Below, in pieces: positions 29,403-53,388 of a stretch of DNA of 64,000 nt. The stretch covers positions 7,502,001 through 7,566,000 of the forward strand of contig OU015568.1 of the NCBI GenBank assembly GCA_907165135.1, read 5' to 3'. The notes beneath the pieces were generated by a model, which was given only the letters and a program-made list of their open reading frames with translations, was not told the origin of the DNA and did not search any database. Positions within the stretch are counted from its first letter, which is position 1. Every line of letters starts with the position of its first letter. The position numbers were made by a program, and so were the translations under genes. Source of the stretch: Oikopleura dioica (lineage: Eukaryota > Animalia > Chordata).

Positions 29403-32400
29403 ATGAGTATTGTGGACGAAAGTCATTTATCGCAGCGTGCAGAAGAGACGACGTTTTATCATGCGGAGAATATTACATTTTCGAAGAATTTCAGAGAGAA
29501 TCTTATTCAAGCATCTGATGATCTTCTCAACAGGAACAGTTCGAGATTTCTCTCGTCTTAACGGGTCCTCGGCCCGAAAACCTGTGTAGAAACCTGACTC
29601 AGGGAGCTACGCGGCTTTTAATCAAAACCCTTTCAGTTCCCTGAGTCAGGTTTCTACACAGGTTCTCCAGCTGAAAATCGGTTAAAATGAGCTCATCTTG
29701 AACTGATTCAGATGTCTGAACGAAGATGCTCAGTTTCTGGCAGAACTGGGCGCAACATTATCAGAAAATTACCATCACAATGGTCAAGAAGAGAGTCTGG
29801 CGAAATGCCCTACGAATCTTCGCGAGCGGCTTAGAATAATTCAAGGCACCAGGGCTCTGATTTAGTGGAGAGCTTATTTATTCATCGCTTGTTTATCAGT
29901 CTATTTTTTCCTAGCTCTGGGAATAAGCGAGAACGAACATTTACAATTTTCAGTGTTCACAAGTTCAACTTTGTTTGAAAGAGTCGACTTGCAATTCAGA
30001 AGAAGCCGATTATCTTCGGTTTTTGGCAGAGTACAGGAATGATTCTCAGATACCTTTCGCTGGGCAGAGTACAAAACCTGAGTCAGGGTCCTAAAAAATC
30101 TGGCGCCTTCGTTGCTACGCGGCTTTCATTAAAGCTCTTTCAGGACTCTTTCTCGGATTTTGTAAACAGCCAAGCCTATCCCTTTCAATGATTCCGATTA
30201 TTGAAATTGTCATTGAAATCTTAGAAAAGACAACTAGCGCGAAATCTACCGGAGAATTGGACAGAGCAAACTGCATCCGAAGTCGGCATTATCACAACAC
30301 AAGCTGGCTTCGGCCCCTTGAGACTCAAACTCGAACAGAAAGTCCTCAGTGGAAATGCTGATGCGTTTACTGTCTATTTATTAGGTCTTGGTGAGTCTTC
30401 ATATTCGCGCCATTTCCTCTTGAAAAACTGTCTTTTTGTTTTAGCGTACAAAGCGGTTGGAGATTTAGACAAGGCGAAACAGACGTTTATAAAGGCGATT
30501 ACGCTGTATTCCTACTTATGGGGAAGTTTCAACTAAAATAACTCTACGAGAAAGTCCACTAAATAGAAGAAAATATTTTCTCGAGAAATCTTTTCATAGA
30601 AAAAATCACCATTTTGAACTAGGATCGACAAGTCCCACCCGACACCCGATCGAAAACCGACGTTTTTGTCGGGTTTTTGTTGGATTTTGCCGACCCTACA
30701 AAAACCCGACGCTGAAATTTTGGCGACCCTACAAAATCAGGTTTTTATAGGGTCATTTATCGGATTTTTGTAGGGTATTTTCGTCGGGTTTCTATTCGGA
30801 TCTACTCATCAGTTTGATTAAAGATAGTACCCGAAATTCTGGTAGCCAAAAATTCTGTCTAGTTTCACCGATTTTGATTCATTTTACTTGATTCAACTTC
30901 AGTGTTGTGAAAACCCGACAAGAACCCGACAAAGACCCGATAAAAACCCGAAAAATACCCTACAAAAACCCGAAAAATACCCTACAAAAATCCGATAAAA
31001 ACCCGACAAAAACCCGACGAAAACCCGACAAAAACCCGATCGGAAAAATCAGACTTCAAGGAAATCCGACGAAAACCCGATCCGGATTTCGGGGGCATTT
31101 GTCGATCCTAGATTTTGAAACTTCGAAAAAGCCCGCATGGCGCGGTCTACTGACATGTTTCTCCGGCTCGCTGGAAAGCGTGCAGCAAGAACTGGCCCTT
31201 CTTTGCGTGAATAGCGACTTGAAAGTGTTCTTTCTTTTGGAATACTCGATCCAACACGACGAGCACCTTTCCTCGGCCATCAACGCGATCAATACGTTGA
31301 TTGATATCTTTCCCAACAATACTGACATTCATGGGCTTCTTGGCAGAGCTTACGCCAATAATAGAAACACTTCTTTGGCGATTTCAGCGTTAGAGACTGT
31401 TCGAAACATTACTGAAGATACATCAGTGAAATATATGGACATTTTAAGGTATGAACGAGATAGGAATAATCCAGCAAAAATCCTGAACTTTTTACAAGCA
31501 AATTTTACGCTAAATTCCGATTTTTACTGCTGAAAGTCGAGAAGCCGCTTGCGGCTTCGAGTATGATAAATTTTATCATTGATAAAACTTCAACAGCGCA
31601 GAGCGCGGCTTTTATGTCTATTTTTGCTCAAAGCCGCAGGCGGCTTGACGATTTTTAGCAGCAAATACGATACGACAGAATTATTATCGGAGAATATCCC
31701 ATATTCCCTCCCCAAGTGGAAAACAGCTGCTTAGGGCTATTACAAGAATCATTAATATTCGGCTCACGCTTTCATTCAGTAATCAATACTTCATGAGTCA
31801 GTCGAGAGCGGAGCTCGCCGCTTTAGTACACGCTCTTTGGGCTGTAGAAAAATACTGTTTCGAGACATGCATCGCCACCGCCAACTACTACAGTCTCCGC
31901 GGCGAGAAATCAACTGCGATCGTATATTTTGAACGGTAAGAACAGCGAGCAAAGAAAGGTTAGACGGATTTTGAAAATCCGTCCGGCAATTTACTGCCAA
32001 GGAAGATTCCTCATTTCTAACATGTTTTTAAATTCTTGTAGAGCGATGGTGTTGAATCCGAGCTACTACGATGCATGGACGTTAATTGGACACGAGTATA
32101 TCGAGTTGAGGAATTTTTCGCAAGGCTTGCACTCGTACAGAAAGGCGATCGCTGGGAATCCGAACGACTACAAGGCATGGTATGGCCTTGGCCAGGTACG
32201 ATCGACTTTTGGGAAACACACGCGATGATTTCTGTTCAGGCTTATGAAATGTTGAAAAATCACACGAGCGCCCTGACACATCATCTCAAAGCCCTCGACT
32301 TGCGGCCAAATAACGATAGAATTTGCGAAGCAATCGGTGACTCATACGAAAAGCTCGATCAGCTGCATCTTGCCAAACGATATTTCAAGCGTGCTTCCCG

Positions 32401-34117
32401 GTGAGTTTCTTTTTCCTACAAATCTTCATAGTGAAATAAGGTGGTAAAATAATTTTGCTTTAGTCATTGAAATCGAATTTGTATATCCGCCAAAGTTCGT
32501 AATAATGAATTAAATGATTACGCTGACGATAGAGATATTTCGCTTTTGTGATGGTTATTTTCATTACGTTGTTTTTAGTTTGGGTCAGTTCTCTTCCGCA
32601 AGTTGTCTTTCGAAGATTGCCCGCATTTGTCGAAGACTGAAAGATGACGACAAAGCGGCGAAATACTACGAAATGTATGTTCAAGCAGAGGTCGAAGCAG
32701 AGTTCGAAATCTATGGGAGTAAAATTGGGAGCTCCCAAAGGGAGCTCCCTTTTTTGGGAGCACAGAGGGAGCAGGAGCACAGGTTTCCAGGGCTGGGAGT
32801 AAATTGGGAGCTCCCAATTTGCTCCCAATTTCAAAAATTTTTTGAAAATCAACAATTTTTAGTCTAGAATCTAATCTGCGCACCGAAAAATGAGAAACGC
32901 TTACTTCATAGTATTTTTCTTAGAAGAGACGTTTTTTTGACAAGATATATTAATTAACGTCTCTTTTAAAATTTCATATTAATATATAGCCAAAATCACA
33001 TCTAGTTTGACTTTAATAATTACAACAAAATGTATTTTTCTCAGATTATAAGCATAATTGTTGATTAAGATACCGTGTTTGCTCAGATTTTTATTAGAAG
33101 AGACGTTTTTTGATTCGATTTATCTTTAAATGTCTCTTCTGAAATTTGATATAAATAAATAGCCTAAAATTGACCTAGATTTGGTTATATAATTTTAATA
33201 AGAAAACATTGAAGTCATTCACGAAATTCGCCTTTTTCAAATAGGCTATTTGCCATTATGCCTATTTATACTTTCTTTATCAGCGCTATATAATAACCAT
33301 ACAACAATGGTGTTGCTACTTAGAGTTTACTTAATAAAATGAAAAACTTTCGAAAATTTTTGGAATTTGAAAAAAGGGAGCAAAATTGGGAGCTCCCAAA
33401 GGGAGCTCCCTTTTTTGGGAGCAGGGAGGGAGCAGGAGCACGGGTTTTTTACGAGGGAGCTCCCTTTTTTCAGGGTGAGGGAGCAGGGAGGGAGCGGGAG
33501 CACGGATTTTCTACCAGATTTCGAACTCTGGGTCGAAGAGGACCACTTGGATCAGAGACACGAAGGCTACAGCGATGCGTACCTATTTCTGGCGAAGTAT
33601 TATATTGAAAAGAAGGTTTGTTCTAGCCTTTTTCGGTCGGTGTGCTATTTCAATTAGGAACTTTAAATTAGACGATATTGATTTTAGAGCCAAGATTCGA
33701 ATAAACTCTGTCTAGGAACTTGTTCCTAAGAGGCCTTTAGATTCTTGTCAGCAAACATCGAACCATTTTTTTCACAAGTGTTCGCCGCTATTTACCATCT
33801 TTTTATTATGCTGTTTTGTTCAGGGAGACTATTCTTCCGGCGAAGAGTTTGCCAGGAAGTGTGTTTGGTACATCCCGACGCGAGACGAGGGGGCTAAGCT
33901 CCTCAAGAAGTTGCCAAAGAAAGAACTGTTCTCCTCGACTGGAGTCGTGGATGGCGACATCCCCCGGAGGCCACTCTCTGAGACACTTCCCTCGCAGGAG
34001 ACGAGCCAGCACAAACTCGACAGCAGTAGCAGTGCCAAGTGCCAAGAGAAACACGAAATGGACAAGTTCGACAACTGGAATGATTATGTCAAGCTTAGGA
34101 AATCAAAACTTGAGTAA
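29403..34117 (+). CDS. CDC23: Anaphase-promoting complex subunit 8 (CDC23), multi-exon TPR protein
   Basis: KYCFETCIATANYYSLRGEKSTAIVYFERAMVLNPSYYDAWTLIGHEYIEL, NPNDYKAWYGLGQAYEML, LRPNNDRICEAIGDSYEKL, DAYLFLAKYY, TRDEGAKLL. Confidence 0.93.
29579..29664. mobile_element. MITE family A, copy 5 (shortened), in CDC23 intron 1
   Basis: Perfect 27-bp inverted arms AACCTGTGTAGAAACCTGACTCAGGGA at 29579-29605 and 29638-29664. Confidence 0.8.
30060..30178. mobile_element. MITE family A, copy 6 (degenerate), in a CDC23 intron
   Basis: CTGGGCAGAGTACAAAACCTGAGTCAGGGTCC left arm, decayed right arm; central GCTACGCGGCTTT shared with copy 5. Confidence 0.6.
30619..31111. mobile_element. MITE family D with AAAACCCGA subterminal arrays, in a CDC23 intron
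   Basis: 13-bp TIR CTAGGATCGACAA; perfect TSD ATTTTGAA at 30611-30618 and 31112-31119. Confidence 0.9.
32698..33530. mobile_element. hAT-like MITE, family E, inserted in a CDC23 coding exon
   Basis: 15-bp TIR CAGAGTTCGAAATCT; perfect TSD GGTCGAAG at 32690-32697 and 33531-33538; GGGAGC/GCTCCC subterminal repeats; internal degenerate direct repeat about 32925-33205. Confidence 0.93.
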
Positions 34118-34361
34118 TCTTTAAACCATCTTTTCACGAATTTTGTTCAAATTTTTACATACATTTGACTATCCTTGAAACAGGCGAACTTCGACTAGCT
34201 GCACTTCCGAAATTAGCAATCCTCACAAGTTCACTTCAAATGAAAAAAAATCTTCACAAATAATGTAGTTTAAATTTTTATTACTATCTATCCTGACACA
34301 TGTTTGCATCACATGTGTGTTTTCACACATTCCTCAAAGAAAGAAAATCCTACCACTGCCC

Positions 34362-52755: not shown

Positions 52756-53388
52756 TTAATGAAAAGGGAAAATATTGGTTGAACAGCAATTCCGAAGTCC
52801 ATTACCGCGAAAACAAAGATGTATTCTGACCGGAATCAGGCAGACACATTTATCGCTGTTCGATTTCGAGGAAAGAGATTTAGATTATTTACTAAAATTC
52901 GCTGTCAGACAGGTATTGCCTTTTGGGCGGCGTGCATAAGCATAAAAGCGCCCTCTACCGCGTCCATTTTTGAGAAGATGCGGAGATGCCGAGCGTGCAG
53001 CGACAAAACGGCCTCGAAATAAAGTACCGCTTCTCTCCACTCATCCCATTTTTGAGTCCGATTTCGATTGTCTAACAGGTGAGAATCGTCTCCATGCCAA
53101 CTTTCTCCTACCCCTCTCGCCTCCTACAAGCACAAGAAAACCTTTCATCAGTTCTGACAGCAAAATTTTCATCGAGAACTTGAAGCTTTCACATTTTTTC
53201 TAGCCTTGAAAGGCTTGCAATAGAGCTGGCAGATGGTCGGAAGCTCAAAGCTTTTGGCCTTCAGAGGTGATAAGAGCGCGCGTCTCAATCAGTCTTTTGT
53301 CAACCCTTTTTTGTATAAATTAGTACTCATCCCACAACTATGCACTATCGAGAATGTAAGCAAAACCTCATTTTTACAAAGTCTAAAA

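What the first reader, a model, noticed from the sequence alone, without database searches (positions are those of the whole stretch)
32690..33538. hAT-like MITE inside a CDC23 coding exon, carrying its own in-frame splice sites (candidate intron birth)
Seen: an 833-bp element with 15-bp TIRs and a perfect 8-bp TSD (GGTCGAAG) splits the codons Q-A-E-V-E-E-D-H. Removing the element and one TSD restores that frame. Read-through stops at 32867 and would drop the C-terminal TPR region. The element contains a GT donor at 32719 (GGGA|GTAAAA) and a pyrimidine-rich acceptor at 33517 (TTTTCTACCAG|). Splicing 32719-33517 leaves 21+21=42 nt, an in-frame 14-aa insert AEFEIYGNFELWVE. Established: CDC23/APC8 is an essential APC/C subunit, and 8-bp TSDs with CAG termini typify hAT elements. 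Inference: the element is tolerated because it splices itself out, which is an introner-like mechanism of intron gain that also adds new coding sequence. An alternative GAG|GT...GAAGAG| splice would delete 3 aa.
Basis: partly seen in the sequence, partly recalled or inferred. Interest (0 to 1): 0.88.

Follow-up and report, generated by a model that had tools for sequence, protein, structure and literature searches.

The report
Transposon inside Oikopleura CDC23 exon
A recently inserted 833-bp DNA transposon sits inside a coding exon of the essential cell-cycle gene CDC23 in the Okinawa Oikopleura dioica reference genome; the public gene model already treats most of it as an intron, but nobody has shown that cells splice it that way.

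Summary
An 833-bp element (32698-33530) has perfect 15-bp inverted ends and a perfect 8-bp target duplication, and it splits exon 10 of CDC23/APC8. The window is Oikopleura dioica OKI2018_I69 (OU015568.1; window position + 7,502,000). Three other O. dioica lineages carry the uninterrupted exon, in genomic DNA and in transcripts, so this is a young, lineage-specific exonic insertion. The other ten introns are shared with the Bergen genome.

That is not independent proof. I found no transcript of this allele. The donor is weak: A at -1, where all 20 reference CDC23 introns have G. A stronger acceptor at 33473 is out of frame. 99 of 550 GT-AG pairs are in-frame and stop-free, so an in-frame pair is expected by chance.

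Rivals remain open: a heterozygous loss-of-function allele in a 3.6%-heterozygous individual, other junctions, or inverted-repeat-triggered "SOS splicing".

Transposon-born introns are already known in larvaceans (Fritillaria) and in an Oikopleura metagenome-assembled genome. At best this is a new member of a known kind, but it is a clean and testable case.

The parts
29403..34117 (+). CDC23/APC8 gene of O. dioica OKI2018_I69: 11 ancestral exons plus the split exon 10. It is annotated publicly as two separate models, 29403-30536 (208 aa) and 31435-34117 (338 aa, CAG5083992.1).
   Evidence: tblastn of the Bergen protein P0157. My exon model translates to 643 aa in frame and contains P0163 exactly. 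Gene ranges come, shifted by the 100% identical L005 alignment.
32579..32718 (+). Exon 10, 5' part as annotated. Native coding sequence runs to 32697; 32698-32718 is 21 nt of transposon (the whole left TIR plus ATGGGA) retained as coding sequence.
32690..32697 (.). Left copy of the 8-bp target-site duplication GGTCGAAG.
   Evidence: The empty site in L003 has a single AGTCGAAG.
32698..33530 (.). 833-bp non-autonomous DNA transposon (hAT-like by TSD length and terminus). No Pfam hit on the two ORFs that run into it.
32698..32712 (.). Left terminal inverted repeat CAGAGTTCGAAATCT.
   Evidence: 15/15 complementary to the right TIR
32715..32831 (.). Left subterminal region with repeated GGGAGC / GGGAGCTCCC motifs. 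32715-32786 is a 72-nt direct repeat of 33376-33447 (94% identical). Candidate transposase-binding repeats (inference).
32719..33517 (+). TTTTCTACCAG|AT, 799 nt.
   Evidence: P0163 contains AEFEIYGNFELWVE, and only this junction reproduces it. Crude PWM scores: donor -1.7 against 4.3 to 11.9 for known introns; acceptor 4.8 against 2.7 to 13.7.
32865..32867 (+). First in-frame stop if the element is not removed. The product would lack about 130 C-terminal residues.
33376..33500 (.). Right subterminal GGGAGC-repeat region.
33459..33473 (+). Competing, stronger acceptor GCTCCCTTTTTTCAG|GG. With donor 32719 it is out of frame and gives an immediate TGA.
   Evidence: PWM 9.6, frame offset 1
33516..33530 (.). 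Right terminal inverted repeat AGATTTCGAACTCTG. Its first two bases are the annotated acceptor AG.
33531..33538 (.). Right copy of the TSD GGTCGAAG.
33518..33615 (+). Exon 10, 3' part as annotated. 33518-33530 (13 nt of the right TIR) plus the 8-nt TSD are retained as coding sequence; native coding sequence follows, up to the GT donor at 33616.

Best explanation
SHOWN: a non-autonomous cut-and-paste DNA transposon (833 bp, 15-bp TIRs, 8-bp TSD, GGGAGC subterminal repeats) inserted recently into exon 10 of CDC23/APC8 in the Okinawa lineage of Oikopleura dioica. The insertion point is a sequence that encodes the loop between two C-terminal TPR helices. Unspliced, the transcript terminates 56 codons into the element.

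INFERRED (about 0.4): transcripts of this allele are rescued by the ordinary spliceosome. It would use a GT 21 nt inside the left end and the AG that forms the inner edge of the right TIR. TIR pairing brings the two sites side by side. This removes 799 nt and leaves 42 nt (21 nt of the left end, 13 nt of the right TIR and the 8-nt TSD copy), which add 14 residues to a surface loop. On this reading the insertion behaves as a newborn GT-AG intron plus a small exonised peptide. The allele is probably still polymorphic.
For: - Insertion and empty sites. L003 and L004 (about 90% identical sister lineage), the Bergen genome L006 and transcripts L001 and L002 all read ...AEVEED(H/D)LDQ... without interruption.
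- All ten other introns are shared in position with Bergen, so this is the only lineage-specific one.
- The public model CAG5083992.1 uses exactly 32719-33517. That annotation used RNA-seq intron hints (PMC8008620).
- The 5' model of the same gene has exactly the length expected if it uses the GA-AG introns (208 aa). As I understand AUGUSTUS, it accepts such introns only with hints, so RNA-seq covered this locus.
- AUGUSTUS did not invent the available in-frame GT-AG across intron 5. It therefore does not bridge every gap ab initio.
- The predicted pre-mRNA fold pairs 32698-32712 with 33516-33530, which puts donor and acceptor together.
- The AF2 model places the 14 aa at the end of helix 185-207 and in a low-pLDDT loop, 208-223.
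Against: - No transcript of this allele could be found, so the junction rests on a gene predictor.
- The donor has A at -1 where 20 of 20 reference CDC23 introns have G. Its crude PWM score is -1.7, below every known donor.
- A better acceptor 44 nt upstream (33473) is out of frame.
- Both annotated sites are buried in the TIR helix, which could hinder as well as help.
- 99 in-frame, stop-free GT-AG pairs exist, so frame preservation is no evidence of design.
- The assembly comes from one individual with about 3.6% heterozygosity and merged haplotypes. The perfect TIRs and TSD argue for a very young, possibly rare allele.
Confidence: 0.4

Rival explanations
1. Loss-of-function (or strongly hypomorphic) allele carried heterozygously. 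The insertion is a young, deleterious polymorphism that the haplotype-merged reference happened to keep. Functional APC8 in that animal came from the empty allele, and the annotated intron is only the gene predictor's way of saving the frame.
For: - The assembly is from a single male with about 3.6% heterozygosity; a 99-Mb diploid draft was collapsed with HaploMerger2.
- Perfect TIRs and TSD, and absence from the closest available lineage, point to a very recent insertion.
- The donor is weak and a stronger out-of-frame acceptor competes.
- An in-frame pair is expected by chance.
- RNA-seq reads from an empty allele would map as an 841-nt gap with non-canonical ends, and a predictor could replace that gap with the nearest GT-AG (inference).
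Against: - The annotation pipeline had RNA-seq hints at this locus, yet it did not bridge the other difficult intron of the same gene ab initio.
- The insertion point is a loop where an insert is likely to be tolerated.
Confidence: 0.3
2. The element is removed from the mRNA, but not at the annotated junction. One route is spliceosome-independent, TIR-pairing-triggered 'SOS splicing' (AKAP17A/CAAP1/RTCB), which cuts at several sites in or near the inverted repeats and leaves small indels, only some in frame. The other route is a different spliceosomal pair: GAG|GT...GAAGAG| (-3 aa), 32675/33473, or a G*-AG non-canonical pair of the kind common in O. dioica.
For: - SOS splicing excises exonic DNA transposons in C. 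elegans and human cells. It needs only base-paired inverted repeats and rarely uses GU-AG (PMC12779559).
- Here the TIRs form a perfect 15-bp helix that extends imperfectly to about 27 bp.
- This very gene uses GA-AG, GC-AG and GG-AG introns, and 11% of OKI introns are non-canonical.
- Several alternative in-frame pairs score higher than the annotated one on the crude PWM.
Against: - The repeats tested for SOS splicing were longer (54 nt in Tc1), and a 15-bp stem is untested.
- SOS factors were not examined in Oikopleura.
- No precise G*-AG excision exists for any register of the TSD (my enumeration on the sequence).
- The PWM rests on only 20 introns.
Confidence: 0.25
3. Assembly artefact or chimeric join in the Nanopore-based assembly.
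For: The assembly is long-read based and haplotype-merged.
Against: A perfect 8-bp TSD and perfect TIRs flank exactly 841 extra bp relative to three empty sites. That is the signature of transposition, not of misassembly.
Confidence: 0.02

Closest known systems
Introners / introner elements: non-autonomous DNA transposons that create introns on insertion (Micromonas and Aureococcus, Huff et al. 2016; Gozashti et al. 2022 PMC9860276 and 2025 PMC12130899). Families were reported in an Oikopleura TARA MAG and in the tunicate Styela clava.
   Same: A TIR/TSD transposon sits at a lineage-specific position inside coding sequence. The splice signals are supplied by the element, and the site is empty in relatives.
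   Different: Only one copy is known here, with no family of intron-forming copies. Removal is imprecise and leaves 42 nt, whereas the classical Micromonas mechanism takes one splice site from the element and the other from the TSD. The Oikopleura MAG families are about 200 bp with unknown TIR and TSD; this element is 833 bp. Splicing is not demonstrated.
MITE-derived non-canonical introns of the larvacean Fritillaria borealis (Henriet et al. 2019, as summarised in PMC11282704)
   Same: Same animal class. MITEs with TIRs and TSDs inserted in coding sequence are removed as introns, and this is proposed as the route of massive intron gain.
   Different: Fritillaria introns end in AG-AC or AG-AT at the element borders and depend on an altered spliceosome. 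Here the annotated sites are GT-AG and lie inside the element, and no precise border excision with G*-AG is possible.
SOS splicing of exonic DNA transposons (Zhao et al., Nature 2025, PMC12779559)
   Same: A DNA transposon with base-pairing terminal repeats lies in a coding exon. Rescue is possible only if removal is in frame and the scar falls in a poorly conserved region, as this loop is.
   Different: SOS splicing is spliceosome-independent, heterogeneous and rarely GU-AG. The model here is one spliceosomal GT-AG junction. The TIR here is only 15 bp. Nothing is known about this pathway in tunicates.
Maize Ac/Ds (hAT) insertions in exons that are spliced from pre-mRNA (Wessler and colleagues, 1987). 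The title appears in reference lists found; the content is from my own knowledge.
   Same: A hAT-type non-autonomous element in an exon is removed through cryptic donor and acceptor sites in or near its termini. This leaves a small in-frame change and a partly functional protein.
   Different: Those are laboratory mutant alleles in a plant. Here it is a natural allele in a chordate reference genome and is untested at the RNA level.

Membership tests
CDC23 / APC8 (host gene) | N-terminal ANAPC8 domain followed by a TPR array; orthology to human CDC23 | tested here: met
   The closest solved structure to P0163 is human CDC23, chains 4ui9_C and 5g04_C, E=1.2e-52. Full-length orthologues P0004, P0151 and P0157 carry PF04049 plus TPRs. 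Window exons give TPR hits.
hAT-superfamily non-autonomous element | 8-bp target-site duplication | tested here: met
   GGTCGAAG on both sides, and once in the empty sites.
hAT-superfamily non-autonomous element | Short TIRs (about 10-25 bp) beginning YARNG | tested here: met
   15-bp perfect TIR beginning CAGAG. The consensus is from my own knowledge.
hAT-superfamily non-autonomous element | Target consensus nTnnnnAn | tested here: inconclusive
   GGTCGAAG has A at position 7 but G, not T, at position 2. One site cannot test a preference.
hAT-superfamily non-autonomous element | Shares termini with an autonomous element encoding a hAT transposase (BED finger, DDE, hAT dimerisation domain) | not testable with these tools
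   No transposase in the window: the six ORFs of 220 aa or more give no transposase hit. The rest of the genome is not searchable here. Other superfamilies with 8-bp TSDs (for example P) are therefore not excluded.
MITE | Short, non-coding, TIR-flanked, present in many copies | tested here: inconclusive
   Non-coding and TIR-flanked: yes. At 833 bp it is at or above the usual size. Only one copy is seen in 64 kb, and none in JGI metagenome contigs or IMG/VR (the two 21-nt hits are chance matches).
Introner | Insertion absent at the orthologous site of relatives (intron gain) | tested here: met
   Empty sites in L003/L004, L006/L007, L001 and L002.
Introner | Element is removed from mRNA by splicing (transcript evidence) | not testable with these tools
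   Only the AUGUSTUS model exists. No transcript-derived protein of this lineage is in the database.
Introner | A family of near-identical copies forming introns in unrelated genes | tested here: inconclusive
   A single copy was found. The host genome outside the window could not be scanned.
Fritillaria-type MITE intron | Non-canonical splice at the element borders (AG-AC or AG-AT) giving precise removal | tested here: not met
   Across the nine registers allowed by the TSD, precise removal would need GG-TG, GT-GG ... CA-AG ends, none of them G*-AG or AG-AC/AT (sequence). The annotated intron is internal GT-AG and imprecise.
SOS-spliced transposon | Exonic DNA transposon whose inverted repeats can base-pair in the mRNA | tested here: met
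   A 15-bp perfect helix extended by imperfect pairs in the MFE fold. Whether 15 bp suffices, and whether the pathway exists in Oikopleura, is not tested.

The most novel reading that the evidence does not exclude
This element belongs to an active O. dioica transposon family whose ends are pre-adapted to the spliceosome. In either orientation a GT lies within about 20 nt of one end, and a pyrimidine tract plus the AG of the TIR's inner edge lies at the other. Exonic insertions would then become GT-AG introns at once, each leaving a short peptide scar. That would be intron birth caught in progress in a culturable chordate. It would also offer a concrete mechanism for the extreme intron turnover of Oikopleura, possibly interacting with TIR-triggered SOS splicing.
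Probability: 0.15. Interest if true: 0.8.

Novelty: new member of a known kind. Interest (0 to 1): 0.5.

Why it matters
Oikopleura dioica has replaced most of its ancestral introns, and the source of the new ones is still debated. In the related larvacean Fritillaria the new introns come from MITEs. In O. dioica itself no clear case of a fresh insertion turning into an intron has been documented, as far as I could find.

This locus offers a defined pair of alleles in an essential gene: filled in OKI2018_I69, empty in three other lineages. The animal is kept in culture in the laboratory that made the assembly. Three questions can each be answered with a few experiments:
- Is a fresh exonic transposon removed by the spliceosome, by SOS splicing, or not at all?
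- How large a scar can APC8 tolerate?
- Does the public annotation reflect real RNA?

The locus also shows that the reference annotation of this gene is fragmented, so the published model should not be taken as evidence of splicing.

Tried and rejected
1. Other copies of the element.
- The TIR with up to 3 mismatches gives no second copy in the window.
- The 23-nt subterminal palindrome pair has no hit in JGI metagenome contigs or IMG/VR.
- The 21-nt left end has two hits in JGI contigs (L008, L009). Both are chance matches in unrelated 50-52% GC contigs with no similarity beyond 21 nt.

2. Transcripts of this allele.
- Three protein-database searches were run: P0004 region 400-600, the 96-aa ORF over the right junction, and P0163:120-300.
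- They returned only empty-site relatives, genomic ORFs and the AUGUSTUS model, and no Okinawa transcript.

3. Rfam and tRNA scans of the whole window found nothing. The element is not a tRNA- or snRNA-derived SINE.

4. Exon skipping as a rescue is rejected. The native exon 10 is 196 nt, not a multiple of three; my first count of 198 was wrong by the two bases of the next donor.

5. Precise excision using GT and AG inside the two TSD copies is rejected. It would remove 848 nt, 7 more than was inserted, which shifts the frame.

6. Intron 5 (610 nt, GG-AG) as a second exonic insertion is rejected. Bergen has a 72-nt GC-AG intron at the same position. The extra length is a separate MITE inside the intron.

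7. The splice-site PWM was built from only 20 CDC23 introns. It is used as a rough guide, not as a test.

8. Denoeud et al. 2010 could not be read because it is not held.

Full report
**Observation.**
GGTCGAAG occurs at 32690-32697 and at 33531-33538. Directly inside these copies lie CAGAGTTCGAAATCT (32698-32712) and its exact reverse complement (33516-33530). The element is 833 bp, 35% GC and non-coding. Both subterminal regions are packed with GGGAGC / GGGAGCTCCC motifs. All six copies of the 10-nt palindrome in the 64-kb window lie inside the element. Deleting the element and one TSD restores ...MYVQAEVEEDHLDQRHEGYSDAYLFLAKYYIEKK. Read-through ends at the stop at 32865-32867.

**What and where.**
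- The 5' ends of two orthologous mRNAs match window 53041-53080. That site is a spliced-leader RNA gene with the Oikopleura dioica leader sequence, followed by GT (the identity of the leader is from my own knowledge).
- Cluster look-up then named the organism directly.
- The window is 100% identical to GCA_907165135.1, OU015568.1, the PAR chromosome of the Okinawa assembly OKI2018_I69. Window position + 7,502,000 gives the record position.
- The gene is CDC23/APC8. The closest solved structure is human CDC23 (E=1e-52), and full-length orthologues carry ANAPC8 plus TPRs.

**Empty sites.**
- L003 (a seawater metagenome scaffold) and L004 (a Logan contig) are 99.5% identical to each other and about 89-92% identical to the window, through exons and introns alike. 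Both align up to 32697 and resume at 33532, with the target present once.
- The Bergen reference genome (L006/L007, protein CBY10438.1 = P0157) has an uninterrupted exon 10.
- So do the transcripts L001 and L002 and the genomic ORFs P0156 and P0170.
- The insertion is therefore specific to the Okinawa lineage. It is younger than a split of roughly 10% nucleotide divergence.
- The empty sites carry no footprint, so it was never present there.

**Gene structure.**
Mapping P0157 on the window and on L006 gives 11 ancestral exons. All ten ancestral introns are at identical positions in Okinawa and Bergen.

| Intron | Okinawa | Bergen |
|---|---|---|
| 1 | GA-AG | GT-AG |
| 2 | GC-AG | GC-AG |
| 3 | GA-AG | GA-AG |
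| 5 | GG-AG, 610 nt | GC-AG, 72 nt |
| 4, 6-10 | GT-AG | GT-AG |

With the extra intron 32719-33517 the exons translate to 643 aa in frame.

**The public model.**
- CAG5083992.1 (P0163, 338 aa, gene g10518 of OKI2018_I69) reads ...YVQAEVEAEFEIYGNFELWVEEDHLDQ.... Only the 32718/33518 junction reproduces it.
- The annotation was made with AUGUSTUS, using RNA-seq intron hints and transcript exon hints from the same culture (PMC8008620).
- The 5' half of CDC23 is a separate model (29403-30536, 208 aa). Its length is exactly what the GA-AG, GC-AG, GA-AG and GT-AG introns plus read-through into intron 5 give.
- As I understand AUGUSTUS, it accepts GA-AG only with hints, so RNA-seq reached this locus.
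- AUGUSTUS did not bridge intron 5, although an in-frame GT-AG (30526-31111, +8 aa) exists.
- Both points make hint support for 32719-33517 somewhat more likely, but they do not show it. A predictor will choose a frame-saving GT-AG by itself.
- Reads from an empty allele would map as an 841-nt gap, which the predictor could not use (inference).

**Splice signals.**
I built a crude PWM from the 20 CDC23 introns (10 Okinawa, 10 Bergen).
- Known donors score 4.3 to 11.9. The annotated donor GGA|GTAAAATT scores -1.7, mainly because it has A at -1 where all 20 have G.
- The acceptor at 33517 scores 4.8, within the known range of 2.7 to 13.7.
- TCCCTTTTTTCAG| at 33473 scores 9.6. With donor 32719 it is out of frame and runs straight into TGA.
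- Of the 550 GT-AG pairs across the element, 99 are in-frame and stop-free. The annotated pair ranks 13th among them.
- The statement that the element carries its own in-frame splice sites is therefore true but not statistically meaningful.
- No register of the TSD allows precise removal with G*-AG ends.

**RNA structure and an alternative route.**
In the MFE fold of the pre-mRNA, the TIRs form a perfect 15-bp helix that continues imperfectly to about 27 bp. The annotated GT and AG sit opposite each other at its inner end. After the annotated splice, the retained 42 nt still form a strong hairpin (-30 versus -17 kcal/mol for comparable flanks).

A paper from December 2025 describes SOS splicing. 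In that process, exonic DNA transposons are cut out of C. elegans and human mRNAs independently of the spliceosome, triggered only by pairing of the inverted repeats. Cuts fall at several sites near the repeats and are rarely GU-AG. Gene function is rescued only when the scar is in frame and in a poorly conserved region (PMC12779559). This fits the present anatomy as well as the spliceosomal model does, except that the stem here is short.

**Protein tolerance.**
An AlphaFold2 model of P0163, made with 11 aligned CDC23 sequences (mean pLDDT 77), places the insert (residues 202-215) at the end of helix 185-207 and in a low-confidence loop, 208-223, before helix 224-241. The native EVEEDHLDQRHEG is that loop. 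A 14-residue addition there is plausible for a TPR solenoid. This is weak, supportive evidence only.

**Classification.**
The 8-bp TSD, the short TIR starting CAGAG and the subterminal short repeats fit a hAT-type non-autonomous element. No transposase partner and no second copy could be examined. 'hAT-like' therefore remains a reasonable label, not a demonstrated membership.

**Comparison and novelty.**
- Transposon-born introns are established. Introners occur in many aquatic eukaryotes, including families in an Oikopleura TARA MAG (Gozashti 2022 Dataset S1) and in Styela clava.
- MITE-derived non-canonical introns are established in the larvacean Fritillaria.
- Splicing of hAT elements out of exons has been known from maize Ds alleles since the 1980s (my own knowledge; the title appears in reference lists found).
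- The present case is thus a new member of a known kind at best. It has one copy, an imprecise internal GT-AG and no RNA evidence.
- Its value is as a clean, very young, allele-defined case in an essential gene of a culturable chordate.

**Verdict.**
| Statement | Estimated probability |
|---|---|
| Insertion into a coding exon | shown, >0.95 |
| hAT-like element | plausible |
| Spliced as annotated | 0.4 |
| Heterozygous loss-of-function allele | 0.3 |
| Removed by another route (other junctions or SOS splicing) | 0.25 |
| Assembly artefact | 0.02 |

Interest is 0.5.

Noticed in passing
window 53041-53080 (+): A spliced-leader RNA gene: the 40-nt O. dioica SL sequence followed by GTGAG. Its 3' part is identical to the 5' ends of the CDC23 mRNAs L001 and L002, which are trans-spliced directly upstream of the ATG. 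No 5S rRNA or any other Rfam family lies next to it.
   Followed up: partly
window 30619-31111, inside CDC23 intron 5 (30522-31131): A second, unrelated 493-bp MITE with TIR CTAGGATCGACAA..., a perfect 8-bp TSD ATTTTGAA (30611-18 and 31112-19) and AAAACCCGAC subterminal repeats. It expands an intron that is 72 nt in Bergen to 610 nt.
   Followed up: yes
window 29403-30536 and 31435-34117: The public annotation splits CDC23 into two gene models at intron 5, which has GG-AG ends in Okinawa (GC-AG in Bergen). Exon 6 (31132-31448) is largely unannotated. The 338-aa protein CAG5083992.1 is therefore an N-terminally truncated model.
   Followed up: yes
window 29534-29711, 29846-29927, 30037-30229: CDC23 introns 1-3 are non-canonical (GA-AG, GC-AG, GA-AG). 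Intron 1 is GT-AG in Bergen, so the donor changed between lineages while the position was kept.
   Followed up: yes
window 29552-29691 (intron 1) and 30077-30133 (intron 3): A 140-bp near-perfect hairpin element (68-nt arms, 4-nt loop; core GTAGAAACCTGACTCAGGGA) lies in intron 1, and a related fragment lies in intron 3. Both introns are much longer than in Bergen (178 vs 61 nt and 193 vs 111 nt).
   Followed up: partly
window 32683-32706: The exon sequence at the insertion point (AAGCAGAGGTCG) is 11/12 identical to the next 12 nt (AAGCAGAGTTCG), which are the end of the TSD plus the start of the TIR. The target already resembled the element's own terminus. This may be chance, or target preference for TIR-like, TCGA-centred sites.
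   Followed up: no
window 32913-33150: The AT-rich middle of the element holds a duplication of about 174 bp (32913-32937 and 33087-33111, 96%). Each unit carries its own inverted repeat (AGAAGAGACG / CGTCTCTT).
   Followed up: no
window 34094-34198: In Bergen a last GA-AG intron follows ...DYVK and the protein ends KTNFE. The Okinawa model instead reads through to LRKSKLE*. A possible homologous end, ANFD*, lies at 34184-34198 after an AG, but the corresponding donor would be CT. The sister-lineage ORF P0166 also reads LRISKLE*, so the read-through end may be real.
   Followed up: partly
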